NCBI RefSeq assembly: GCF_040938485.1
Contig: NW_027271791.1
Location: 62,001-126,000, forward strand
Direction: 5' to 3'
Origin: Diadema antillarum
Taxonomy: Eukaryota
Length of the DNA: 64,000 nt
In this document: positions 30,728-46,863 of the stretch, in pieces
Layout: every line of letters begins with the position of its first letter
Numbering within the stretch: position 1 is the first letter of the stretch
Notes under the pieces: model-generated
The model's input: the letters and a program-made list of their open reading frames with translations, nothing else
The model's database searches: none
What the model was told of the DNA's origin: nothing
Made by a program: the position numbers and the translations under genes

Positions 30728-33700
30728 CTATGAATCAGTCGGCAGTCCAAAGAGTTTGATGCTGCCGGCATCCCTGGATCTGTCGTACTTGTCCTTGTCA
30801 TCACATGCAAATGCAAGGAGATATCTCTTTGGGTGCCAGGCCACAGTGAATGTTGGTGACTCACAGTTGACTTCAGTTATCTTTTCACCTTTGATAAACA
30901 CACATGATTTTAAATACTTTACATTAGTTTTCTGCTAAAATTAAGTGAAAAAACAAAACAAAGTCACACAAATTCAGGGAAAAGTCAAAAGTGGACTTAA
31001 ACCTAGAGAATGACAGATCTGACACTTCTATACTCGGATGTACTTTCAGAGAAGTGTTGCATTTATGGTATAAACTAAGGGACAGATTGGCTGCACTTTG
31101 CCTTAGTGGGCAGCATATAAGCAAGCAACGGGAGGAAAAAAAAAAAAAACTTCTTTCACAGTTAGCTGGCTACAGCAGCACCCGCCTCCACACAATGCGT
31201 TTGTAAATTGCTTCATTACTGGCATGCTGCCATCTATGGTGAGGGTTTGTCAGTCTTGAAGAGATCTTTGATGCCTCTACACGGCAAGCACACAACTACA
31301 TGTGAAAGAAAGCCCAGCATTTTGTAGATGGGGACCACACGCAGTCAACTCTTTTTCAACGTTTTAAGTCGTATATATTGAATTTTATGAAAGTCTAAAC
31401 ATTTTGTCGGACCAAAATGTGGAGAACGTGTGTCAATTACATCATATACATGTATGTGAGTGGAATTTTGCCTATGCTAAAGCTTATTTTCTGGTCCAAA
31501 TAAATTTAGATTTTAATCAGGTAGAGTTGCCTGTCAAAATCTTCCCATGAGCAGTTACAATTGTATTGCTTGTCTTTTCTTTCTTGTTCGCTAGGTTGCA
31601 CAATCTTTCCTTGGCATACTGTAAAAGCTGTTATTTTTGCAAGGGCTTAATTTGTGCAAATTTTGCAAAATTTAACAACACACTAAAACATTGCCACACA
31701 CAGGGTATAAGTGCACTTACTACATAGTCTCGGCGTCAAATTGCAAAAACAGCATCTTGCAAAAACGTCGGTGACCTCTTCATTCAAGAAAATATCTGTA
31801 CGCGAAATAGCTTTTACCATATTCAGACATCTTAGTTTGGAAAAGAGCAGAGCAAGCAAATTTATATTTACTATGTGAAACAAAAGTCAAAAATTTAAAA
31901 CATCCATGACTTCAAGTAATGCAATTAAACATACCTTACCAACAAAATTGTACAGTACACAAAGTATTGCATTGTCTTACCACAATTGTCACTCCTGGAG
32001 ATGCTAATTTCAGCATGATGAAACTTACAGATGAGAGAACCCCTGAGTGATGAAATATACAAGCCAATTGTACAAATACGATGTACATGTACATGAACTC
32101 AAATCTCACCTGTTTCTACATGAGCAATGTCGATTATGAGGTCCTCAGAGGCAGAAGCCAGTAACTGGCCGTCGTGACTGAAACTCAGGGCTCGAACCGG
32201 CCAGTCGAGTCTGGAAGGACACAACGTATCCAAACAATTTACCCAGTATCATGGTGGCATGTGTTAAGATACAGACTGACAGACTTGTTTCCAAATTTTA
32301 CATGTAGGTTTCATCTTTATCAAAGAACATCTTTTGACTCGTTTCAATTTGGTCACATGGTCCCAAAAGATAGAGGCAGATCAATTCTTTCCTCATCAAA
32401 TAATGCAATACATACATACATACATACATACATACATACAGAATTGTGGTGTCTTTGAAATGGTTTCTAGCTTTGCTTTTAACACAGTACGGCAAACATG
32501 AAATGTTTTGGGATGTAGAAATTTTCTTGAATTTCACCCTGTACTAAAACAGCACAAAAATTACACACAAACACTTTTGGGAGATCAAGACACCCTTTTC
32601 TATCACAGCATAAAACAAGTGAAGCTTACTAAAATTGAGTCAGTGTGAAGGAGTTTTGATTTTTTTTACAAAATACTGGATGTCTTTTTGAAGGCTGTGT
32701 ATTTCTTAGCTTGGCAAGTTGTGCAAAACATATAAATGAGGAGCAAAGAGCAAAAATACACTCTTTCCTACCTTGAAAATGTTCTGACACAGACAAGCTC
32801 AGGAACATCCCACAAACTGACCAGGGCATCTGCACTCCCCGTTGCAAAGTACTTGCCGGTCGGGTCAAACTCGATACAGATACAGTTGGCCGGGTGGGCA
32901 TTGAGTTCTTGCAGTTGCTTCAACTCTGGATAGCTGTGGAAGGGAGAGTTGAGAAAGCAAAGAAAGCAATGATATTCTGCCTGGAAGTTTACACACAGAC
33001 TTCTGGATGTTTTCAACATTTTAGACATGTCTTTGTCATCTCAATGTAGTACAATGCCCTTTGCATTCATGACAAATATTAAGTGAGTGAAGTTTTACTG
33101 AAAAAAAAAAATGAAAATACAAAGTGATTCATATTCATCATTTGATTTTTCTAGAAAGAAAATGCACTTTCCTTGACCTTTGACAGGAATGGAGTCGACC
33201 TGTTTACAAGTGTTCCATACTCTTTGGAGTTACATAACAAAAACTTCAGTTCTGCTTCTAAGATACCTTCAAGTCAGTCCACTCGTCATGTAACATGTGC
33301 ATATTACTGTAAAAGTGGATATTTTCGTGTGACTAATTTTTCGCGCTTGGCCGGGTCGGAAGAGTTTCGCGTGTTTTTAATTCCGCGGAATCAAGACATC
33401 ACGCACAGGCACATATGGCAAGCAAAAATATTCGCGTGCTTTTATTTTCGCGCTAGTTTCTGGTTGCGCGAAATGCGCGAAAATTTGAACACTGCAAAAA
33501 TTTCCACTTTTACAGTATTTGCCTTTGGTCATTTTTGTTAAATGCTAAAGTCATACCCTATATTGCCTCAATTTATTTTCTGTCACTACTTCACTATGTG
33601 TTTTATGGACATACAATACAGGATCGATTGTTTTAAAGCTTTTGATCTTGCTATGATGTGAAGAGTCAAAACACTAGTAATGTCTGCAGGGATGTCAACC

Positions 33701-36700
33701 TTGTAAACACTATTGCAGTATTCTGGGGGGGGGGGGGGGGTGTGAGGGTTGCACAAGTTTATTTGGGCAGAAAAACAGTATCGTTACCTTCAGTACAATC
33801 AACATGTTTAGTAATACAACTTGGAAAAAATAGTATTTTCCATAAAACCAGCAGCATGTTTGACATAAAAACAGTGCAAAATATTTTAAGAGAGCAAGAG
33901 TTGGCATTTCTGTGTCTGAGCATTTTGGCTTGCCACTACATAGCCAAACTAAAAGACACATGTTACATAATAATTAAAGTTGGCCTTGTTCATGCCCTTA
34001 ATCATGCAACGTGAATCGTTACCTCAAGATGTTGATACAACCGTGGCCATTGGTGAGAAAGAAGAGATCACTGTCATTGTTCCACGAGATCTCATTGACC
34101 TCGTACTTGAACTGCTCCTCATTCAGGATCTTACTCGACTTGACATCGATGAAGGTGACCAGGTCATCCTTGTTGCCCACGGCAATGTTGTGGCCATTGG
34201 GACTCCAGCAGATGTTGATGTTCTCACCTGATAATTGCAGACACAAAACGAGATAGCCAACATTACACTACCACACTCTATCTAATAAAAAGGACATAAA
34301 TCATTGATGAAATTTGAAGTTTACCAATATTTTAGCAGATTGATATAGAATTACATATATGCATCCTGTGATAATCATTACAGCATACACACAAAATATA
34401 TAGAGGGAATATAAATCATACAGAGAATTACATAGAGAATATTGCAGACTTTGGGCAAGCAATGCACTTGTTTAGCATTGCTATATGAAGACAACACAAA
34501 AGTAATTTTTAGTCTATTTTTCATTACTGTCAAGCCTCATGAAACATTTCTTCTTCTTTTTTTTTTTTTTTGTAATAACCTGAGCTCCTTACTAACTACT
34601 TACTAGACAAGTTTGCTCATTAATCACCATAAAAGCACTGAAATGGACAAAAATTCAAACTTGTTGACATCACACTGCCTAGAGATGAAAATCAAAAATG
34701 AAATAAAAACACCTGGTCTGCCGAAGTATATCTTTACAAAATTAAAACCCACCCTTCGTTTGTATGGTTGAGACTGACTTTCCAGACCGTGTGTCCCAAA
34801 TTCTGATGGTCTTGTCTCCCGATGCTGTGACAAAAGTGTCTGGGTTCCTGGGATGCCAGCACAGTTGATCCACACTACCTGCATGGCCTTTCAGAATCAT
34901 TTCCCTTGTCTGAAGAAAAAAAAGGATAATTAGATAGTTCCAATCAAAATACTGCAGTATTTCACTTTGGTCTATGCAAATTTAATAAACTTTTATCATT
35001 ATCATCATTATTCATATATTATCATATAGACAATAATATAAGTGTTATTACATTTTTACATCTGAAATCATTTGACATCACCATCAACATCACCATCGTC
35101 ATCATTATTCATTTATTGTATTAAAAAATAGGAAAAAAAAAAACAGCACCAGATATTACACGCCCTTCTTCATCAACATCACTCCGCAGACATTCTCACA
35201 AGCTCTTTTATTCGGCAAAATCGTGAAATAGGCTCCACCGCAGTGCCTGGTACCCGTGCGTTAGCATAGCTAGCAAGCAAGGTTAGGTTAGGGTTAGGGT
35301 TTTTAATAGGGTTAGGTAGGGTTGTATTTATGGTTAAATTGGCCGTTAAATTAGTCGAGGGACATTAGGGAGGCCTAATTCCGAGAAGAAAGGGAGGACG
35401 AAAGATGCTATGCTGCGGAAATTGGCCCCACCGCTGTATCAATCTCGCGTAAAAGCTGACGAACCTGTTTAGTGGGGCTGCATTCACGAGTATACTGTGG
35501 AAGAAAGCCCCACCGCCGTGCTTATCTACCGATGAACGCCACACAGTGGGGCTGAATTCACGAGTGTATTGGTTTTAGTATGGACACGCAGTGGTGCAGG
35601 TGGGGCCTATTTCACGAGTATGCCCTTTATTCCATATATACAGTCCGGGAAACCCGCTCATGAGGACCGCCCCCGCGTACGAGGATGGTCCCTCCTCATG
35701 AGGACCTCCCCCCGCCTCATGAGGCCCCCCATTCACTTCTTATTCATCTCACATCTGACGTATAAATTGTCGCAACTTTGCACGGTGATTTTTTGTTACA
35801 CACACATGTCCACTATCCATGATGAAAAGAAGAAAAAATCCTGTCTGTTTTTTTTTTTTTAAATCGAGTTTTAATCACCCGATGCAGAGCGCCCATCAAA
35901 ACACGGGCGCCAGCGCGTTCGCACAATGCAAGACTGCCGCACCTAGCGGCCTGATCCGACTAAATATTTTCGATGCTTTTTTCTGCGGCTCTCACCTCTC
36001 CGCACACGAATTAGCCTCGTGAAGCTGAAGTCTGACATCTTTTTACACAAATTCGTAACGAGAAAAATTAAATCAGTACTAACCTGATCTTGTCCATATA
36101 TTCCAAATTACTATTCCACACTGATAGAGTAGGTGGGTAGATGACATACTCCAGTTTGTTAGCAAAATAATCACTTTGTAGGTATGACGAGTTCACTTTC
36201 TTCGTCAATTCCACCCACGATTCCGCCGCCCGCTTACCGTTTGGGCGCTTTCTCTGGAATCATCCCGCGACGCGACGTACGTCGCATCACATCACGCATC
36301 CAGCACATACCAGTCTGGTACTTTAGTGCTGGATGCGTGATGTGATGCGACGTACGTCGCGTCGCGGGATGATTCCAGAAAAAGCGCCCAAACGGCGGAA
36401 TCGTGGGCGGAACTGACGAAGAAAGTGAACTCGTCATACCTACAAAGTGATTATTTTGCTAACAAACTGGAGTATGTCATCTACCCACCTACTCTATCAG
36501 TGTGGAATAGTAATTTGGAATATATGGACAAGATCACGTTAGTACTGATTTAATTTTTCTCGTTACGAATTTGTGTAAAAAGATGTCAGACTTCAGCTTC
36601 ACGAGGCTGATTCGTGCGCGGAGAGGTGAGAGCCGCAGAAAAAAGCATCGAAAATATTTAGTCGGATCAGGCCGCTAGGTGCGGCAGTCTTGCATTGTGC

Positions 36701-38586
36701 GAACGCGCTGGCGCCCGTGTTTTGATGGGCGCTCTGCATCGGGTGATTAAAACTCGATTTTAAAAAAAAAAAACAGACAGGATTTTTTCTTCTTTTCATC
36801 ATGGATAGTGGACATGTGTGTGTAACAAAAAATCACCGTGCAAAGTTGCGACAATTTATACGTCAGATGTGAGATGAATAAGAAGTGAATGGGGGGCCTC
36901 ATGAGGCGTTCCCCGGGGGGGCCTCATGAGGCGGGGGGAGGTCCTCATGAGGAGGGACCATCCTCGTACGCGGGGGCGGTCCTCATGAGCGGGTTTCCCG
37001 GACTGATATATGCACAAACTGTTGGCTACCAAACATTGCATTGACCAAAGGACATTCTTCCCAGACACAATCAGACTGTGGACTGCTCTGCCCCAGGATA
37101 TCGTCAACTGCACCATCTATAGCTCAGTTTCAGCAAGTGGTGCAGGATATTTAACTCCGCTCGGCGCTACTCGGCGCTAACGTTAGAGTAGAAGGGAATG
37201 CTGGCGCTGGTGGGGTGTTTTTAGCTGCACCGTAAATTTACTGTAGAAAATGTTCAGGTAACGTGTAACGTTAGTTATTTTGGTTACCGTTACGCGTTAT
37301 TTTAACATGCACTGTTGTCTGTACACATGGTACATAAACACGTCCACACCTAACTGCGACCAGCAGCCCCAACGTACAACGTACAGTGTTGCAGAGCGGC
37401 GGGTCTCCGGGGCTAGTCCACACCCACCATGCTAGACAGAAAGATCCGTCTGTCCGGAGGACTCTTATGTATTTTGCCATTAACGCCGTCCTCCGTAGAC
37501 AGACGGAAGGTTGTAGTACCCATTGCTGTGTGGAAGTTCTTAACCACTGTCTCAATGGAAAATTGGGTGAGGTACCTCACCCTTCTCGATTGCGTCTAAT
37601 TCACGGCCCTAGGTCGGCAAATTTAAGCTTGAATAGTTAAATCAACTATTCAAGAATAGACTACACTCACCAGATTAATGAATAATCCAATATTTCGGTC
37701 GAATTTTCAACGCAAAACACATAGAGTTCTATCAACCAGCCCGTCGCGTCGTCACGTTCAAACTGCAGAAACATACAGTATGAATCTATTAGCCAATCAC
37801 ATGCGAGGTAGTTTCTACGTGTTTTTTTTACTTAATAAAGTACCTCGCATGTGATTGGTTTACAGATTCAAAATGGCGACCTACAGCTAGCGAACGGCGA
37901 TGTTGCGATATGGATAAAATTTCTGCATTATAACCGCGTTACTGTGAGTATTTCGATTGCAAAATGTGAGATATTAACCACAAATATTGCTGCATAATGT
38001 GTCATGTCATGTCAAACTTGTTTGAATGTAAAAAAGCTGTCTGAAATTTGGTTTATCGTAACGTTTGATCTGTGCGCTACTGCCACACAGGAGCTGGCAT
38101 CATTGACTTCGGTCTGTATACGGAGGGGATCCGTGAAGCCAGACGCAGTCTCCGCGGAACATTCCCCGACGGACAGATACAGACCGATCTTTCGGTCAAC
38201 CACCATGCCTGCCAACAGTACTAGACTAGTACGTAAGCGGACATAACCATAATTTATATTTGACCAACTGCGACCAGTCGAAGTACTCAGTATTAACTGT
38301 GTGAAGCGGATCGCGCGGAGGAGCGCCCCGACGTTAAATGGTGACCGAAAATACCCTTTAATTTTATAGCATGTGTTTACAAGCTCTGAGTTTGTCAGCA
38401 ACTCACCATCCGATCTCGATCCAGAGTGAAAACGCTCACATTTCTGTCGAATGAACCCGAAGCTAACATTCTTCCATCACAATTCCATGCGACAGAGTGT
38501 ACTTTCGAGGCATGAGCGCCATTGTGCTCTTTGGTTCGAGAATTCCTTTCAAAATGCTTGCGCAGTCCGTCAACGGGAGAAGCCAT
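30728..38586 (-). CDS. THOC3: THO complex subunit 3 (TREX, WD40 repeat protein), 321 aa, 6 exons
   Basis: Exons 38586-38407, 34909-34753, 34227-34023, 32933-32772, 32210-32110, 30888-30728; all GT-AG, phases consistent, 966 nt. Peptides KVHSVAWNCDGRMLASGSFD, GHAGSVDQLCWHP, GENINICWSP, EEQFKYEVNEISWNND, AHPANCICIEFDPTGKYFATGSADALVSLWD, LDWPVRALSFSHDG, CESPTFTVAWHPKR and KLFGLPTDS match THOC3 as recalled. Confidence 0.96.
31617..31821. mobile_element. TACTGTAAAA-family MITE (diverged)
   Basis: TACTGTAAAAGCTG ... TAGCTTTTACCATA imperfect termini. Confidence 0.6.
33305..33517. mobile_element. TACTGTAAAA-family MITE, young CpG-rich copy
   Basis: Perfect TACTGTAAAAGTGGA / TCCACTTTTACAGTA termini (TA-flanked) with many intact CGCG motifs. 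Confidence 0.85.
35221..35617. mobile_element. MITE carrying telomere-like (TTAGG/TTAGGG)n
   Basis: TIR TCGTGAAATAGGCTCCACC / GGTGGGGCCTATTTCACGA. Internal GGTTAGGTTAGGGTTAGGG...TAGGGTTAGGTAGGG. Repeated GTGGGGCTG.ATTCACGAGT. Confidence 0.65.
35641..37005. mobile_element. 1365-bp near-perfect palindromic (foldback) element in THOC3 intron 1
   Basis: Left arm 35641-36306 is the reverse complement of right arm 36326-37005, with a 19-nt centre. Termini CAGTCCGGGAAACCC / GGGTTTCCCGGACTG sit in a TA-rich site. The supplied ORF track shows mirror ORFs (35819-36022 + and 36599-36802 -). Confidence 0.92.
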
Positions 38587-42700: not shown

Positions 42701-43105
42701 ATTGAAAAGGGAACCTGCTATTGGTAATGATGATGATGATTTTCATCATACTATTGTTATTACTAACGTCTCATTGGAGGGAGGATATATTATGCTACCA
42801 CAATCTCAGGGAATTCAACTTTTTACCTCACCCAGTTCAATTTGAAGAGAAAACAAAAAGAAAATAAATAAACAAACAAACAAACAATTGGTGGTGTAGC
42901 AACTATCTTGCCAAAATATGCATCTAATCGGAATATTGAAGCTGTGTTATTGTACTTATTGTTGTTGCAAGGTAATTTCGGTACACACAACAAATGCAAC
43001 GTAATTGCAGTATTGTGGACAATACAAAAATTTATTTTGTCCTCCTTTACATACTTAAAGGCCTGATGTGCATATCAAATGTCTTAAATTTTCAATGTAT
43101 CTTTC

Positions 43106-43140
43106 GTCTGTCTGTCCATCTATCTATCCGTCTATCTATA

Positions 43141-43171
<31 letters not shown>

Positions 43172-43230
43172 ATCTATCTATATCTATACCTATCCATCCA
43201 TCCATCTATCCACAATTTATCTATCTATGT
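43106..43230. repeat. (ATCT/ATCC)n microsatellite
   Basis: Read directly. Confidence 0.9.
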
Positions 43231-43513
43231 ACCTTTTTATCTACATGTGGCAACATTTACCTACTTACTTCTATAGAGAGAATGTGTGTGGGGGAGATAA
43301 TACGATTACTGCATTTTGACATGAACATTGCAATAATGACTGTTCAATCTGACAGCAACTTCACGTGGCATTTGATCATACCCCATAACTGCTAGATTAC
43401 CTATTAAAATACTATCAATGAAGTATTTGGTTTCTTTGTTTATATTTCCAGGGCATCGTAAATCGGCTACAAATGTTCCGATACTGCTATGACAGCTGGT
43501 GTAAGGTGACCTT

Positions 43514-45586
43514 ATGACCATGGGAGACGGTTTGATAAAAAATCTCCTTGCGATCTGCTGCTTTGTTTCCTGCGCGCGGATCGCCCTCGTCGTCATCTAC
43601 CTCGGCCCACAAAGTTCGCCCCCTACTCCGGTCTTTCAGCTCGGATACTCTTCTGGGTCTGTCCTTCGGAGGGAGGCTCCGAAGAGACAGCACGACCGCG
43701 GGGGAAGCAATGTCAGCTTTGTTGGTTACCATGACGACCAGGCTCACCATGAGATCGCGAGGAAGGAAGATGATGATTGGCGAAGATTGGAGGGAGACAG
43801 TGGCGATCAGGGGGAGGTTATACCGGCTGCGGCAGTGTCACAAAACTTCGATCTTATGCCAGCAGGTGGCTGTCAGGGCAGTGGAAAAGACATTTTCTTG
43901 CTGACGCTCGTCCATTCTCTTCCACCCCACTTCGCCCAGCGCCAGGCGATACGAGAAACATGGGCGAGAAACATGTCCGAGGTGAATGGTGCCAGGGTGA
44001 AAGTTATCTTCGTTACACCCGGGGTCTCTCCGCGCCCGGATGTCATGACCGGCCTCCGTAAGGAGGCGGCAGAGTACGATGATGTGATCCATAGTGTGGC
44101 GGGGGATTCTTTGATTTCCTACCGACCCTCTTCCAAGGTCCTGCTCTCAGAAATGGGGTGGACCCTCACCTACTGTACTGGAGCCAAGTTTGTGCTCTTC
44201 GCCAACGACGAACTCTTCGTCAATATCCACCATATCGTCGAGCGTTTGAAACTCGTCACCCCCAAACCATTCAAGACTTTCATCCTTGGGAGAGTGAAGA
44301 AATTCGCGCGAGTGGAAAGAGACACTCTGCGATGGGACCATGTATCCGAGACGGTGTACACCAGAGAAACATACCCAAATTATTGCGTGGGAGGGGCTGG
44401 CTTTGTTATGTCGGTGCCTTGTATGAGAGAGATCCACCCACGAGCTGTTCGTTTTAACAAAAGAGCCAATGCATTTCCGTTGAGTGACGCGATGGTCGGG
44501 ATAGTCTCAAACCAACTAAACATAGTTCCTCGCTACCACGAGGAGTTCCACAAGTCGGGAGGGGAAGCCGATTACTGCGACTTACGCGATACCTTGACGT
44601 TGGGTGATTTCAGTCGACCAGAGCTCATACGTGGGGCATGGAGGAACTACACGCACAAGATGGACTACTGTCCAAACCCCCTTCCCAACGCCACCGAAGT
44701 GTCATGGTGGACTAAAGGCGTAAACCATAAACAGTACTTTAGTGAGACATTGCGTTTAATTCACGAGCCTCGCAGCTGTGAAGGCCAAGATATATCACTG
44801 TTAGCTCTGGTTAGTACTCATCCGCACAATACTAATCTCCGAAGTGCAATACGAGTGACTTGGGGCCACCCAAATTACATCAAACCCCTAAAAGTGCGAT
44901 TAATTTTTGTTATAGGTCGAGAGACAGTCGAAACACAGAAATCGGTCCAAGATATCGAAGGAGAAGCAAAACAGTTTGGTGACATACTGCAAGCTAATTT
45001 TGCTGAATCTTTTCATAACCTAACGCTAAAGGTCATCTTGGGATTGAGATGGGTCTCAGAGAAATGCCCTTCTGCCTCTTTCGTGTACAAGGGTGATGAC
45101 GACATGCTGGTAAACTTTGAGCACATGATCGGCTATCTGGACCAGCTCCAGACATCAGAGTCAAAGAACCTCTTCATGGGGAATCTAATGTCCATGAGTC
45201 CCGCTATCAGAACCTCGTCCAAGTACCAGGTCCGCAGGGAAGTCTACCCCTTCAAGTATTTTTTGCCTTATTTCTCCGGCGGTGGTTACATCATGTCCGC
45301 CGCGGCCGTGCAACAGATGGCCCCCATGGCAGTGTCTACGAAGCTCATCCCCATTGATGACGCCTACGCGGGAATCCTAGCCTTCCGAGCTGGAGTCCCC
45401 CTCAAGCACTCGGGAGGATTCATAGTTGGCGGCAGCAAGCGAGATGCGTGTCGTCTGCGGCGAGCGTTCAATATGCACGGCTTCAAGAAGACAGCAGTCT
45501 TAATAGGAACGTGGAAAACCTTCAAGGATCCGAGCCACAAGTGTGACGAGGACAGGGAGAAGAAAACGTGGTCTCATGACGTTTAG
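43514..45586 (+). CDS. Type II membrane beta-1,3-glycosyltransferase (CAZy GT31, B3GNT/B3GALT-like) with two tandem catalytic-type domains, single coding exon, 690 aa
   Basis: Uninterrupted 2073-nt ORF with an N-terminal hydrophobic anchor (LLAICCFVSCARIALVVIYL). Domain 1: RQAIRETW...FANDELFVN...YPNYCVGGAGFVMS...PLSDAMVG. Domain 2: RSAIRVTW...ESFHNLTLK...YKGDDDMLVN...PYFSGGGYIMS...PIDDAYAG...MHG. The true start may be the ACCATGG at 43520. Confidence 0.93.
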   Translation: MTMGDGLIKNLLAICCFVSCARIALVVIYLGPQSSPPTPVFQLGYSSGSVLRREAPKRQHDRGGSNVSFVGYHDDQAHHEIARKEDDDWRRLEGDSGDQGEVIPAAAVSQNFDLMPAGGCQGSGKDIFLLTLVHSLPPHFAQRQAIRETWARNMSEVNGARVKVIFVTPGVSPRPDVMTGLRKEAAEYDDVIHSVAGDSLISYRPSSKVLLSEMGWTLTYCTGAKFVLFANDELFVNIHHIVERLKLVTPKPFKTFILGRVKKFARVERDTLRWDHVSETVYTRETYPNYCVGGAGFVMSVPCMREIHPRAVRFNKRANAFPLSDAMVGIVSNQLNIVPRYHEEFHKSGGEADYCDLRDTLTLGDFSRPELIRGAWRNYTHKMDYCPNPLPNATEVSWWTKGVNHKQYFSETLRLIHEPRSCEGQDISLLALVSTHPHNTNLRSAIRVTWGHPNYIKPLKVRLIFVIGRETVETQKSVQDIEGEAKQFGDILQANFAESFHNLTLKVILGLRWVSEKCPSASFVYKGDDDMLVNFEHMIGYLDQLQTSESKNLFMGNLMSMSPAIRTSSKYQVRREVYPFKYFLPYFSGGGYIMSAAAVQQMAPMAVSTKLIPIDDAYAGILAFRAGVPLKHSGGFIVGGSKRDACRLRRAFNMHGFKKTAVLIGTWKTFKDPSHKCDEDREKKTWSHDV

Positions 45587-46863
45587 TTACCATTTCTACA
45601 TTTCATTGAATCTACGAGAGACAAGAAAAGTTGCAATATTTCCCGCTTGAAGAATATAATGGCTGATTTTATGTAGGTTGTCCAAATAAGGACATTCGAG
45701 GTTATTCAGAGATGATGGTAACCGTATCTTTTGTTTGTGTCTATTTATTCAACAAGACTTCGCTCTTTTGGAATCCCAATTTCTAGTTGTGCCTATATCA
45801 ACTTCTCTTTCAAATAGCGCCAACGAGCTTAAAATGGAATAACCCCAGACGCTGAAGTTGGAACGAAATTAAAGTGACCATAATCATGGTGTTTTAAGCC
45901 GGTATACATGCTGTATGTTCATTTGCATAATAGTGTTATCTTTAGGAGAAAATTTTGATTTACATCTATATACGCACCATTGAGGATGATGACGTACAAT
46001 TTATTTTTGTGATGTTTTGAAAGAATGAATGATAGGGCGGTTTGCTTGAATAGCATTCGATTGTTTGCATGTTGTGGGATTTTTTCTTGAGGGGAAGGGG
46101 TGATCGTTATATCTGACGTTGTTGTACGCATATCATTTCAACAGCGGACTCAGATGCATGTTATGACGTTTCAGCATGATCCGTACAAACAAAAATTTCA
46201 ACATTGAGCTTTCCGCTTTGAAATGTCATTGTTAAAGCAGTAACTGGTTGAAATGTTCTTGCCAATCGAATCCTGAATTGGACAGGAATTTTAGTGAAAT
46301 GCTTACAGACTTTACACATTTGTTTTTTATATATATACGTGACTCAGGCTCAGCATCTCACCTCAGATATGAAACAGAGGCCCTCTCAGATATACCAGAA
46401 TTGGTATAAAAATTATGTATGTAATAAATACACACTATAGAGGTCGTTAGTCCGCTGTACATCAAACTTATCATCATTAGTTAATGAAAAGTTTATAAGT
46501 TGAATACTATGACGAGATTTACCAAGGTGCAGTTTAATACTTCGAGCTGTTATCGCTAAGCTCAATATGACTTTTACATTAACTTTTTTTTTAAAGAAAG
46601 GAAATTTGTATTGTAGTATTTTCTTTTAATATTGTCGTTTATATTGATGAAAAAAGTCTGTATTGTATTCTAATATATATTTTAGTACATCAACAACTGA
46701 CAACTATAATTTCAATTTAATTAGGGACATCAATGAGTAGAAGCTCAAATAGCCGCCCATTAGGTGATTGAAAGGAATTCCACGTTTAAGTTGATTATTA
46801 ATATGAAGAGCTAAGTCTAAGACAAGCAGAACAATGAAAGTTTTATTACAATCGGACCGAAGT

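What the first reader, a model, noticed from the sequence alone, without database searches (positions are those of the whole stretch)
43514..45586. Single-chain pseudo-enzyme/enzyme GT31 pair: degenerate N-terminal domain fused to an intact beta-1,3-GT domain
Seen: both domains lie in one exon, so this is not a gene-model fusion. Domain 2 keeps K-G-DDD (45095-45103), GGGY, PIDDAY and the metal-binding His (MHG, 45476). Domain 1 has F-A-NDE (44204-44212) in place of K-x-DDD, PLSDAM in place of PIDD, and LGDF in place of MHGF, yet keeps the fold-defining R-x-AIR-x-TW, W...C and YP-x-YC-x-GG motifs. Known: GT31 enzymes need DxD plus a C-terminal His for Mn2+/UDP-sugar binding; B3GNT2 works as a dimer and carries PIDD; Cosmc is an inactive GT31 paralogue that chaperones T-synthase; B3GLCT has an extra non-catalytic GT-A domain. 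Inference: domain 1 is a retained pseudo-GT serving as built-in dimer partner, chaperone or acceptor-binding module, possibly an undescribed architecture for echinoderm glycan synthesis.
Basis: partly seen in the sequence, partly recalled or inferred. Interest (0 to 1): 0.75.

Follow-up and report, generated by a model that had tools for sequence, protein, structure and literature searches.

The report
Tandem dead-plus-live GT31 glycosyltransferase gene
A sea-urchin (Diadema) gene encodes one membrane protein with two copies of a sugar-adding enzyme fold: the second copy looks intact, while the first has lost its metal-binding residues yet has been conserved throughout echinoderms, an uncharacterised parallel to the human enzyme B3GLCT.

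Summary
Window 43514-45586 (+) is one uninterrupted 690-aa ORF. It encodes an N-terminal signal anchor, a disordered stem and two PF01762 (GT31) domains.

Domain 2 keeps every catalytic element mapped on solved B3GNT2. Domain 1 has lost the metal ligands and the Lys of K-x-DDD.

The architecture occurs in at least five paralogue groups across all five echinoderm classes. None of 25 domain-1 sequences tabulated keeps DDD or the C-terminal His. A domain tree indicates one internal duplication before the paralogues diverged (moderate support).

Domain 1 is under purifying selection: 12 synonymous against 4 non-synonymous differences to a related species, and 33-47% identity across classes where the stem is about 10%. 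AlphaFold2 predicts a rigidly packed two-domain unit (pTM 0.82).

The closest precedent is B3GLCT (crystal structure 2026), which has a dead N-terminal GT-A domain plus an active GT31 domain. The echinoderm family is an independent origin in the B3GNT/B3GALT branch, and I found no paper on it. What domain 1 does remains inferred. Hemichordates carry separate single-ORF arrays of 4-7 GT31 domains.

The parts
43514..45586 (+). Complete single-exon CDS, 690 aa plus stop: a type II membrane protein with two GT31 domains
   Evidence: ORF list. 99% identical to a 688-aa Diadema antillarum protein. Collinear with the D. antillarum locus L001.
43535..43603 (+). N-terminal signal anchor (aa ~8-30), the only hydrophobic segment
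   Evidence: Kyte-Doolittle maximum 2.45 at aa 11-30. AlphaFold2 helix at aa 4-30.
43604..43834 (+). Disordered, fast-evolving stem (aa 31-107)
   Evidence: pLDDT below 50 for aa 33-107. About 10-16% identity between echinoderm classes. 4 synonymous and 6 non-synonymous differences to organism A over aa 1-115.
43859..44671 (+). Domain 1 (aa 116-386): GT31 GT-A fold with a degenerate metal/diphosphate site
   Evidence: Pfam PF01762 at aa 141-338, 65 bits. VIA-align aa 127-382 against Manic Fringe, Z 20.0, rmsd 2.8. 12 synonymous against 4 non-synonymous differences.
44204..44212 (+). N231-D232-E233 in place of DxD (B3GNT2 D245-D246-D247); only the central, ribose-contacting Asp is conserved
   Evidence: Orthologues have NDE, HDE, PDN, PEN or TDS.
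44477..44494 (+). PLSDAM: remnant of the xED motif. D325 (44486-44488) is equivalent to the catalytic base and is invariant in the 22-sequence alignment.
   Evidence: The role of B3GNT2 Asp333 is taken from PMC7948508.
44600..44611 (+). LGDF: Gly364 sits at the position of the metal-binding C-terminal His
44672..44776 (+). Inter-domain linker (aa 387-421) with a conserved C-P-x-P-x-P-N-A-T sequon. It corresponds structurally to the N-terminal helical segment that precedes the B3GNT2 core.
   Evidence: Conservation. B3GNT2 alignments extend into model residues 383-394.
44777..45544 (+). Domain 2 (aa 422-677): intact GT31 catalytic domain
   Evidence: Pfam 152 bits. B3GNT2 E 5e-38. VIA-align against B3GALT5 Z 33.3, rmsd 2.0, and against B3GNT2 Z 32.5. 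36% of positions invariant across clade A.
45089..45103 (+). K526-G-D528-D529-D530 (DxD motif; D530 corresponds to the metal ligand Asp247 of B3GNT2)
45278..45289 (+). GGGY glycine loop (GT31 motif IV, GxxYxxS)
45350..45367 (+). PIDDAY (xED motif; D616 corresponds to the catalytic base Asp333 of B3GNT2)
45476..45478 (+). H655, the C-terminal His metal ligand (His376 of B3GNT2)
43431..46030 (+). Extent of a 2701-nt contig found, with the same length, in three public runs of a related species. It is collinear with the genome and is possibly the unspliced mRNA.
   Evidence: table 8. The library kind of those runs is not on record, so transcription is not shown.

Best explanation
The gene encodes a Golgi-type (type II) membrane glycosyltransferase. 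Its lumenal part is a rigid unit of two GT31 GT-A domains that arose by an internal tandem duplication in the echinoderm stem lineage.

Domain 2 is the enzyme: an inverting, metal-dependent beta-1,3-glycosyltransferase of the B3GNT/B3GALT branch. Its acceptor pocket keeps most B3GNT2 contacts (Y571, Y586, I614, D616, F636). The donor sugar is undetermined.

Domain 1 is non-catalytic. It has lost the Lys of K-x-DDD, the first and third Asp of DxD, and the C-terminal His. These include the two residues that hold the metal (Asp247 and His376 in B3GNT2). The replacements are not even conserved between orthologues. Domain 1 is nevertheless kept under purifying selection.

The most likely role (inferred, by analogy with B3GLCT) is that domain 1 packs against domain 2 and contributes to acceptor recognition and/or stabilises domain 2. 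Its retained vestigial pocket (catalytic-base Asp, acceptor-site aromatics, uridine-contacting residues) may act as a sugar- or nucleoside-binding site rather than a reaction centre.

Shown: the architecture, the motif states, conservation and selection, and the predicted rigid packing. Inferred: the inactivity of domain 1, its role, and the chemistry of domain 2.
For: Architecture: one ORF, two PF01762 domains and a single signal anchor.

Residue mapping: the HMMER alignment to B3GNT2 combined with published residue roles (PMC7948508) places D528-D530, D616 and H655 on Asp245-247, Asp333 and His376. The intramolecular alignment and the profile alignment give N-D-E, S-D and G at these sites in domain 1.

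Family-wide pattern: in the 25 echinoderm or echinoderm-like two-domain proteins tabulated (the window protein among them), domain 2 has DDD in every case and the C-terminal His in nearly every case. No domain 1 has DDD or His.

Selection on domain 1:
- 12 synonymous against 4 non-synonymous differences to organism A (binomial P 1.6e-5 against neutrality).
- 75% identity between Diadema and camarodont urchins, equal to domain 2.
- 33-47% identity across classes, against about 10% for the stem.
- 14% of domain-1 positions invariant across clade A, against 1% in the stem.

Origin: in the careful PMSF tree, echinoderm domain 1 and domain 2 together form one split (79/79). Each domain is close to monophyletic and the subfamilies are mirrored between them.

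Packing: AlphaFold2 on aa 108-680 gives pLDDT 91.3 and pTM 0.82, with all five models at pLDDT 90 or above. A two-domain chain cannot reach that pTM unless the relative placement is confident (inference).

Precedent: in B3GLCT the N-terminal dead GT-A domain forms the acceptor cleft together with the active GT31 domain (PMC13597200).
Against: No biochemical data exist for any member.

Domain 1 keeps the catalytic-base Asp, the ribose-contacting Asp, the uracil-contacting acid and the glycine loop. A non-canonical activity or nucleotide binding therefore cannot be excluded. GT14 and some GT6 enzymes work without DxD or metal (PMC7185993).

In B3GLCT the dead domain has lost the catalytic base, so the analogy is imperfect.

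I could not see whether the interface resembles the B3GLCT cleft, the B3GNT2 dimer or neither.

The count of synonymous and non-synonymous changes rests on the truncated difference table. I assumed that table is complete for 43514-44730.

Support for the sister relation of domains 1 and 2 is moderate (79/79).

Transcription is not firmly shown: the library kind of the covering runs is unknown, and the one RNA run has only a 245-nt contig.
Confidence: 0.6

Rival explanations
1. Domain 1 is a cis-acting chaperone or built-in pseudo-dimer partner. It replaces the homodimer contact of single-domain B3GNT-type enzymes, or acts like COSMC fused in cis, and is needed only for folding and stability of domain 2. 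It has no part in substrate recognition.
For: B3GNT2 is an obligate-looking homodimer. COSMC is a dead GT31 paralogue that chaperones C1GALT1. AlphaFold2 predicts a rigid two-domain unit. The domain-1 core and Cys framework are conserved.
Against: A pure scaffold would not need the catalytic-base Asp to stay invariant, nor the acceptor-site aromatics and uridine-contacting residues to be kept. COSMC lost both DxD and xED. The interface geometry could not be compared with the B3GNT2 dimer.
Confidence: 0.22
2. Domain 1 is a cryptic second active site with non-canonical chemistry, metal-independent or using other ligands. The protein would then be a bifunctional transferase like LARGE or the chondroitin synthases.
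For: The catalytic-base Asp, ribose Asp, uracil-contacting acid and glycine loop are retained. Metal-independent GT-A enzymes exist (GT14, bacterial GT6). In paralogue clade B, domain 1 has D-D-H plus a conserved Arg at the C-terminal His position, which could substitute for the metal.
Against: In the window's own clade A the DxD third position varies (E, N, S) and the C-terminal His position is Gly in all members. No conserved basic substitute is evident there. The Lys of K-x-DDD is lost. Domain 1 is much less conserved than domain 2 at depth (14% against 36% invariant).
Confidence: 0.1
3. Artefact or decay: the two domains are really two adjacent genes read through, or domain 1 is a decaying relic with no function.
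For: Tandem arrays of single-exon GT31 genes are common, and some multi-domain database entries elsewhere keep DDD in all copies (Mya, Pycnogonum, insects).
Against: The frame is uninterrupted and there is no second signal anchor. The linker is conserved. The same architecture is found in four classes for this orthologue and in five classes for the family. Full-length two-domain ORFs sit on 2.5-3 kb contigs of independent runs. Purifying selection acts on domain 1.
Confidence: 0.03

Closest known systems
B3GLCT (beta-1,3-glucosyltransferase, GT31; crystal structure in PMC13597200, 2026)
   Same: One chain carries an N-terminal, catalytically dead GT-A domain derived by duplication from the C-terminal active GT31 domain. 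The dead domain has a degenerate DxD and no C-terminal His. The linker is Cys-containing and the two domains are in intimate contact. The two domains are about 25-26% identical to each other in both proteins.
   Different: B3GLCT belongs to the Fringe branch (PF02434), has multiple coding exons and acts in the ER on O-fucosylated TSRs. Its dead domain is truncated after helix alpha5 and has lost the catalytic base. The echinoderm protein belongs to the B3GNT/B3GALT (PF01762) branch and is single-exon. Its domain 1 is full length with all four Cys positions and keeps the catalytic-base Asp. No sequence match to B3GLCT was seen, and the duplication is independent. The inter-domain geometry could not be compared, because the structure is absent from the PDB copy.
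B3GNT2 and B3GALT5 (single-domain GT31 enzymes with solved structures)
   Same: Domain 2 matches both over the whole catalytic domain: B3GNT2 E 5e-38, Z 32.5; B3GALT5 Z 33.3, rmsd 2.0. All catalytic residues and most B3GNT2 acceptor contacts are kept. The gene has a single coding exon, as B3GALT/B3GNT genes do.
   Different: Those enzymes have one GT-A domain, and B3GNT2 forms a homodimer. Here a second, degenerate GT-A domain is fused upstream. Lys149 of B3GNT2, which is modelled to contact the O4 of the donor GlcNAc, is Val or Ile here, so donor specificity is open.
COSMC (C1GALT1C1), the dead GT31 paralogue that chaperones C1GALT1
   Same: It is a GT31-derived pseudoenzyme retained because it supports an active GT31 partner.
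   Different: COSMC is a separate polypeptide. It has lost both DxD and xED and belongs to the C1GALT branch. Here the dead module is fused in cis and keeps the xED Asp.
Two-GT-A-domain enzymes (LARGE1/2, CHSY/CHPF, COLGALT1/2)
   Same: Two GT-A folds sit in one chain. CHPF has a modified DxD that is thought to be inactive.
   Different: Their two domains come from different GT families, are less intimately packed, and mostly carry two different activities. Foldseek and VIA alignments to them have rmsd above 20 A, so the arrangement is not shared.

Membership tests
GT31 / PF01762 Galactosyl_T: domain 2 | Pfam gathering threshold, plus the five GT31 motifs of Petit et al. 2020: I RxxxRxTW, II DxD, III (Y/F/W)xG, IV GxxYxxS, V (E/D)DVxxGx(W/C) | tested here: met
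   152 bits against a cutoff of 23. Motifs: R443..R447-x-T-W; K-G-D-D-D; F-M-G556; G589-x-x-Y592-x-x-S595; D615-D616-A-x-x-G620. Motif V departs from the consensus at two positions: Ala replaces Val and Leu replaces W/C.
GT31 / PF01762 Galactosyl_T: domain 2 | Metal and catalytic residues as in solved B3GNT2 (Asp247, His376, base Asp333) | tested here: met
   D530, H655 and D616 are aligned by HMMER to 6wmm. Residue roles are from PMC7948508. Enzymatic activity itself is not testable here.
GT31 / PF01762 Galactosyl_T: domain 1 (fold membership) | Pfam threshold, GT-A fold, motifs I, III, IV | tested here: met
   65 bits alone. Z 20 against Manic Fringe. R143..R147-x-T-W; G259; G-x-x-F-x-x-S300.
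Active GT31 enzyme: domain 1 | DxD motif (II) and C-terminal His for metal and UDP-sugar binding; (E/D)D of motif V | tested here: not met
   N-D-E replaces D-D-D, Gly replaces His, and S-D replaces (E/D)-D. None of the 25 domain-1 sequences tabulated has DDD or His.
B3GLCT-type 'dead GT-A + live GT31' two-domain enzyme | N-terminal GT-A lacking the metal site, fused to a C-terminal active GT31 domain, the two being each other's closest relatives | tested here: met
   (domains 1 and 2 together form one split, 79/79). The architecture is analogous to B3GLCT, not orthologous.
B3GLCT-type 'dead GT-A + live GT31' two-domain enzyme | Orthology to B3GLCT (Fringe-like PF02434 catalytic domain, TSR O-fucose acceptor) | tested here: not met
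   The best families are PF01762 and B3GNT2/B3GALT5. The Fringe model gives only weak secondary hits.
B3GLCT-type 'dead GT-A + live GT31' two-domain enzyme | Acceptor-binding cleft formed between the two domains | not testable with these tools
   Only pLDDT and pTM are returned (pTM 0.82). Model coordinates and the B3GLCT structure were not available.
B3GNT2-like dimer (intramolecular pseudo-dimer) | Interface through helices alpha4, alpha5 and alpha12 with two-fold symmetry | not testable with these tools
   The interface is described in PMC7948508. No access to model coordinates.
COSMC-like pseudo-GT31 | Loss of both the DxD and xED motifs | tested here: not met
   The xED Asp (D325) is invariant in the 22-sequence alignment. 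One distant paralogue has Glu there.

The most novel reading that the evidence does not exclude
Echinoderms evolved, independently of B3GLCT, a whole multigene family (at least five ancient paralogue groups). In it a metal-site-dead GT31 domain that still has a sugar- or uridine-binding pocket acts as a built-in reader or acceptor-selecting module for the adjacent live beta-1,3-transferase. Paralogue-specific dead domains would set the acceptor specificity for echinoderm-specific glycans. Hemichordates would have taken the same logic further, into single-ORF chains of 4-7 alternating dead and live GT31 domains that function as glycan 'assembly lines'. 'Dead GT-A as specificity module' would then be a recurrent design principle rather than a peculiarity of B3GLCT.
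Probability: 0.3. Interest if true: 0.72.

Novelty: new variant of a known kind. Interest (0 to 1): 0.55.

Why it matters
The 2026 B3GLCT structure was presented as an unusual case: B3GLCT is the only human glycosyltransferase in which both GT-A domains belong to GT31, with the extra one catalytically dead and used for acceptor recognition.

This locus shows that the same solution arose independently in the B3GNT/B3GALT branch. It has been kept for roughly half a billion years in a diversified echinoderm family, and hemichordates have separate, larger arrays.

That gives glycobiologists a natural comparative series of many paralogues. All have an intact domain 2, and their domain-1 states differ, including a D-D-H/Arg variant. 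The series can be used to test how pseudo-GT domains tune specificity or stability.

It also flags a set of unannotated enzymes that probably contribute to the unusual N- and O-glycans reported from echinoderms. It does not overturn any concept; its value is as a new, testable instance.

Tried and rejected
- **dN/dS against the D. antillarum orthologue (L001).** There are only 9 substitutions in 2067 nt, so there is no power per domain. I used instead the differences to a roughly 96%-identical contig from runs X2-X4. That table was truncated, so only the stem and domain 1 could be scored.
- **Two-domain structural neighbours.** Foldseek and VIA-align on the PDB copy find only single-domain matches. 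The multi-GT-A enzymes align at rmsd above 20 A. The B3GLCT structure is not in the copy. The ESM Atlas search was uninformative.
- **Expression.** No clearly labelled RNA run of the species was offered. One seawater metatranscriptome holds a 245-nt piece. Three runs of unknown library type hold an identical-length 2701-nt contig. That is suggestive of an mRNA but not proof. The 5' loose end at 43431 is diverged collinear sequence, not a splice junction.
- **First domain tree (LG+G4).** It nested hemichordate domain 4 inside echinoderm domain 1. Under the site-heterogeneous model three of the four hemichordate domain-4 rows rejoin the hemichordate clade; one very long branch (P0035 domain 4) stays with the echinoderm domains. 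I treat the earlier grouping as long-branch attraction.
- **Motif table.** My first table was offset by one residue. It was redone.
- **Uracil-contacting residue.** I first took D490 as the uracil-contacting Asp. Mapping onto B3GNT2 shows the equivalent is E498, with K506.
- **Second copy in the window.** There is none.
- **Earlier scan notes.** A words search shows only one other GT31 pseudoenzyme note in this genome.
Full report
**1. Observation**

Window 43514-45586 (+) is a single 690-aa ORF. No other ORF in the 64-kb window exceeds 172 aa. In-frame stops lie 12 and 24 nt upstream of the ATG.

Pfam finds PF01762 (Galactosyl_T, CAZy GT31) twice. The first hit is aa 141-338, at 65 bits when the N-terminal half is scanned alone. 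The second is aa 443-632, at 152 bits. The curated cutoff is 23 bits. The halves align to each other over 266 residues (26% identity, E 3e-26).

Only one hydrophobic segment exists (aa ~10-30). It is followed by a stretch of about 75 residues that AlphaFold2 leaves disordered. This is the signal-anchor-plus-stem layout typical of Golgi glycosyltransferases (general knowledge). Domain 2 has no anchor of its own, so the two domains cannot be two independent type II proteins.

The window is from a Diadema sea urchin. The protein is 99% identical to a 688-aa D. antillarum protein, and the locus is collinear with that genome.

**2. Residue-level state of the two domains**

The HMMER alignment of domain 2 to solved B3GNT2 can be read against the published residue roles (PMC7948508).

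| Domain 2 residue | B3GNT2 residue | Role in B3GNT2 |
|---|---|---|
| D528 | Asp245 | Points toward the donor sugar |
| D529 | Asp246 | Contacts the ribose |
| D530 | Asp247 | Metal ligand |
| H655 | His376 | Metal ligand |
| D616 | Asp333 | Catalytic base |
| E498, K506 | Asp215, Lys223 | Contact the uracil |
| Y571, Y586, I614, F636 | Tyr289, Tyr303, Ile331, Phe356 | Acceptor contacts |

Domain 2 is therefore a complete GT31 active site. Structurally, aa 413-680 superpose on B3GALT5 (Z 33.3, rmsd 2.0 A, 259 residues) and on B3GNT2 (Z 32.5). The donor cannot be called. The Lys149 position of B3GNT2, which is modelled to contact the O4 of the donor GlcNAc, is Val here.

In domain 1 the equivalent residues are as follows:
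- F229 replaces the Lys of K-x-DDD.
- N231-D232-E233 replace D-D-D.
- G364 replaces the C-terminal His.
- S324-D325 replace D-D of the xED motif.

The two metal ligands and the Lys are gone. Several features remain: the catalytic-base Asp, the ribose-contacting Asp, an acidic residue at the uracil position, the glycine loop, the Tyr303 and Phe356 equivalents, R-x-x-x-R-x-T-W, and all four Cys positions shared with domain 2.

It hides the fact that the base itself survives.

**3. Distribution**

A word-indexed search with the whole protein found two-domain homologues in four echinoderm classes:
- Echinoidea: Diadema, Lytechinus
- Holothuroidea: Holothuria
- Asteroidea: Acanthaster, Patiria, Asterias
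- Crinoidea: Anneissia

It also found a second paralogue clade (B) that includes the ophiuroid Amphiura, and further groups.

An exhaustive phmmer search with domain 1 alone found more echinoderm two-domain paralogues, from Antedon, Holothuria and two more groups in Diadema. It also found hemichordate proteins with four or seven GT31 domains, from Ptychodera, Saccoglossus and Glandiceps. Sporadic tandem arrays elsewhere (Mya, Strigamia, Pycnogonum, insects) keep DDD in essentially every copy.

I tabulated the catalytic positions for 25 echinoderm or echinoderm-like two-domain proteins, the window protein among them.
- Domain 2 has D-D-D in all of them. It has the C-terminal His in all but one complete sequence; one further sequence is truncated before that position.
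- Domain 1 never has D-D-D and never has His.
- Among direct orthologues of the window gene, the DxD triplet reads NDE, HDE, PDN, PEN or TDS. Only the central acidic residue is conserved, and no alternative metal ligand has been fixed.
- Clade B is different. Its domain 1 has D-D-H (D-D-N in Amphiura) and a conserved Arg at the C-terminal His position.

**4. Origin**

I built a domain-level maximum-likelihood tree: 86 domains, LG+C20+F+G4 PMSF, careful search.

| Grouping | Support (UFBoot/SH-aLRT) | Extra rows in the split |
|---|---|---|
| All 22 echinoderm domain 1 | 88/60 | One very long hemichordate branch |
| All 22 echinoderm domain 2 | 76/78 | One 400-aa entry |
| Domain 1 + domain 2 together | 79/79 | The two rows above |
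| Window orthologue group, domain 1 | 100/99 | None |
| Window orthologue group, domain 2 | 100/100 | None |

The 79/79 split separates the echinoderm domains from the hemichordate domains and from the single-domain GT31 proteins. The subfamily structure is mirrored between the two halves.

The simplest reading is one internal tandem duplication. Loss of the metal site in the upstream copy followed, before the crinoid-eleutherozoan split, and whole-gene duplications came after that. Support for the deepest nodes is only moderate.

The hemichordate arrays form their own clade with position-by-position orthology, so they are an independent expansion. A first LG+G4 tree placed hemichordate domain 4 inside echinoderm domain 1. 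That placement largely disappears under the mixture model, and I treat it as long-branch attraction.

**5. Selection**

The D. antillarum orthologue differs at only 9 of 2067 nt, which is useless for per-domain dN/dS.

Three public runs of a related species ('organism A') each contain an identical-length 2701-nt contig collinear with window 43431-46030, at about 96% identity. I scored the differences listed for 43514-44730.
- Domain 1: 12 synonymous and 4 non-synonymous differences, on about 188 synonymous and 625 non-synonymous sites. That corresponds to omega of about 0.1, with binomial P 1.6e-5 against neutrality.
- Stem: 4 synonymous and 6 non-synonymous differences, not distinguishable from neutral.
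- Caveat: the table was truncated at 40 rows. I assume it is complete for that interval.

Protein-level conservation gives independent support.

| Measure | Domain 1 | Domain 2 | Stem |
|---|---|---|---|
| Identity, Diadema vs camarodont urchins | 75% | 73% | 40% |
| Identity across classes | 33-47% | 54-60% | 8-16% |
| Invariant positions across clade A | 14% | 36% | 1% |

Domain 1 is clearly constrained, though less so than the catalytic domain at depth.

**6. Structure**

AlphaFold2 on the full protein gave pLDDT 79.6 and pTM 0.67, with both domains confident. On aa 108-680, with a 33-sequence alignment, it gave pLDDT 91.3 and pTM 0.82, and all five models had pLDDT 90 or above. Each domain is less than half of the chain. 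A pTM of 0.82 therefore requires a confidently predicted relative placement (my inference). The prediction is of a rigid two-domain unit, not beads on a string.

I could not obtain coordinates. The B3GLCT crystal structure is not in the available PDB copy.

B3GNT2 alignments extend into the inter-domain linker (model residues 383-394). The linker therefore corresponds to the N-terminal segment that precedes the catalytic core in single-domain enzymes. It carries a conserved N-A-T sequon.

**7. Mechanism**

The best-supported account is that domain 2 is the enzyme and domain 1 is a non-catalytic GT-A module fixed to it.

By analogy with B3GLCT, I rate an acceptor-selecting or stabilising role as most likely. 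[quoted passage not shown]

Unlike B3GLCT and COSMC, domain 1 here keeps the base Asp, two acceptor-site aromatics and the uridine-contacting residues. That leaves room for a lectin-like or nucleoside-binding function of the vestigial pocket.

Rivals are a pure cis-chaperone or pseudo-dimer role, and a cryptic non-canonical activity. The latter is more plausible for clade B than for this gene. A read-through artefact or neutral relic is effectively excluded.

**8. Comparison and novelty**

The family is GT31, B3GNT/B3GALT branch. The gene is single-exon, as those genes are (PMC8022947).

The survey of GT31 domain architectures in that paper lists X+GALT and FRINGE+X combinations, but no GALT+GALT. 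The B3GLCT paper calls B3GLCT the only human enzyme with two GT31 domains and 'an unusual example'. Full-text searches for tandem or double GT31, pseudo-glycosyltransferase, and echinoderm or hemichordate GT31 found nothing on this family.

It is therefore a new, independently evolved variant of a known kind. It is interesting as a comparative system but does not change any concept, and all functional statements remain inferences.

A words search of this scan's notes showed one other note in the same genome, on a GT31 gene lacking catalytic motifs. I did not examine it.

Noticed in passing
L002:1001-7372 (Ptychodera flava, protein P0032); also P0033, P0035, P0036, P0038, P0042, P0175: Hemichordates encode proteins with four or seven tandem GT31 domains. 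Intact domains (K-x-DDD, ED, C-terminal His) alternate with degenerate ones. The 2123-aa Ptychodera protein occupies exactly 6372 nt of genome, so it is one uninterrupted ORF and not a spliced gene-model fusion. In the domain tree most of these arrays cluster together, apart from the echinoderm family.
   Followed up: partly
Paralogue clade B proteins P0017 (Diadema setosum), P0018, P0019, P0176, domain 1: In this sister family, domain 1 has D-D-H (D-D-N in Amphiura) instead of DDD, a conserved Arg at the C-terminal His position, and a B3GNT2-like uracil motif. This pattern could fit a DxH-type or metal-independent site rather than a dead one.
   Followed up: partly
window ~33500-38200 (-), seen through L001:1-4682: The upstream neighbour, on the opposite strand, is a WD40-repeat gene. 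I did not examine it.
   Followed up: no
window:42994-43395 and 43100-43216: A low-complexity tandem-repeat stretch lies just upstream of the gene. Its chance ORF translates as repeated SIYL units. The read-laying tool skipped it as a repeat.
   Followed up: no
window:50535-50727: A run of N (assembly gap or masked stretch).
   Followed up: no
window:43537-43781: A 245-nt contig from a seawater metatranscriptome run (X1) matches the 5' part of the CDS with 5 differences. This hints at Diadema-like RNA or DNA in environmental seawater samples.
   Followed up: partly
Proteins P0051 and P0192-P0202 (Mya arenaria): A set of near-identical 1090-aa proteins sits on three contigs of the Mya arenaria assembly. 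Each has three GT31 domains, nearly all of which keep DDD. This looks like a recent multi-copy tandem-domain expansion, unrelated to the echinoderm family.
   Followed up: no
same genome, another piece (scan note s1-229817): Another first-stage note reports an intact GT31 gene of 1743 nt that has lost its catalytic motifs. It may be a further member or relative of this family.
   Followed up: no
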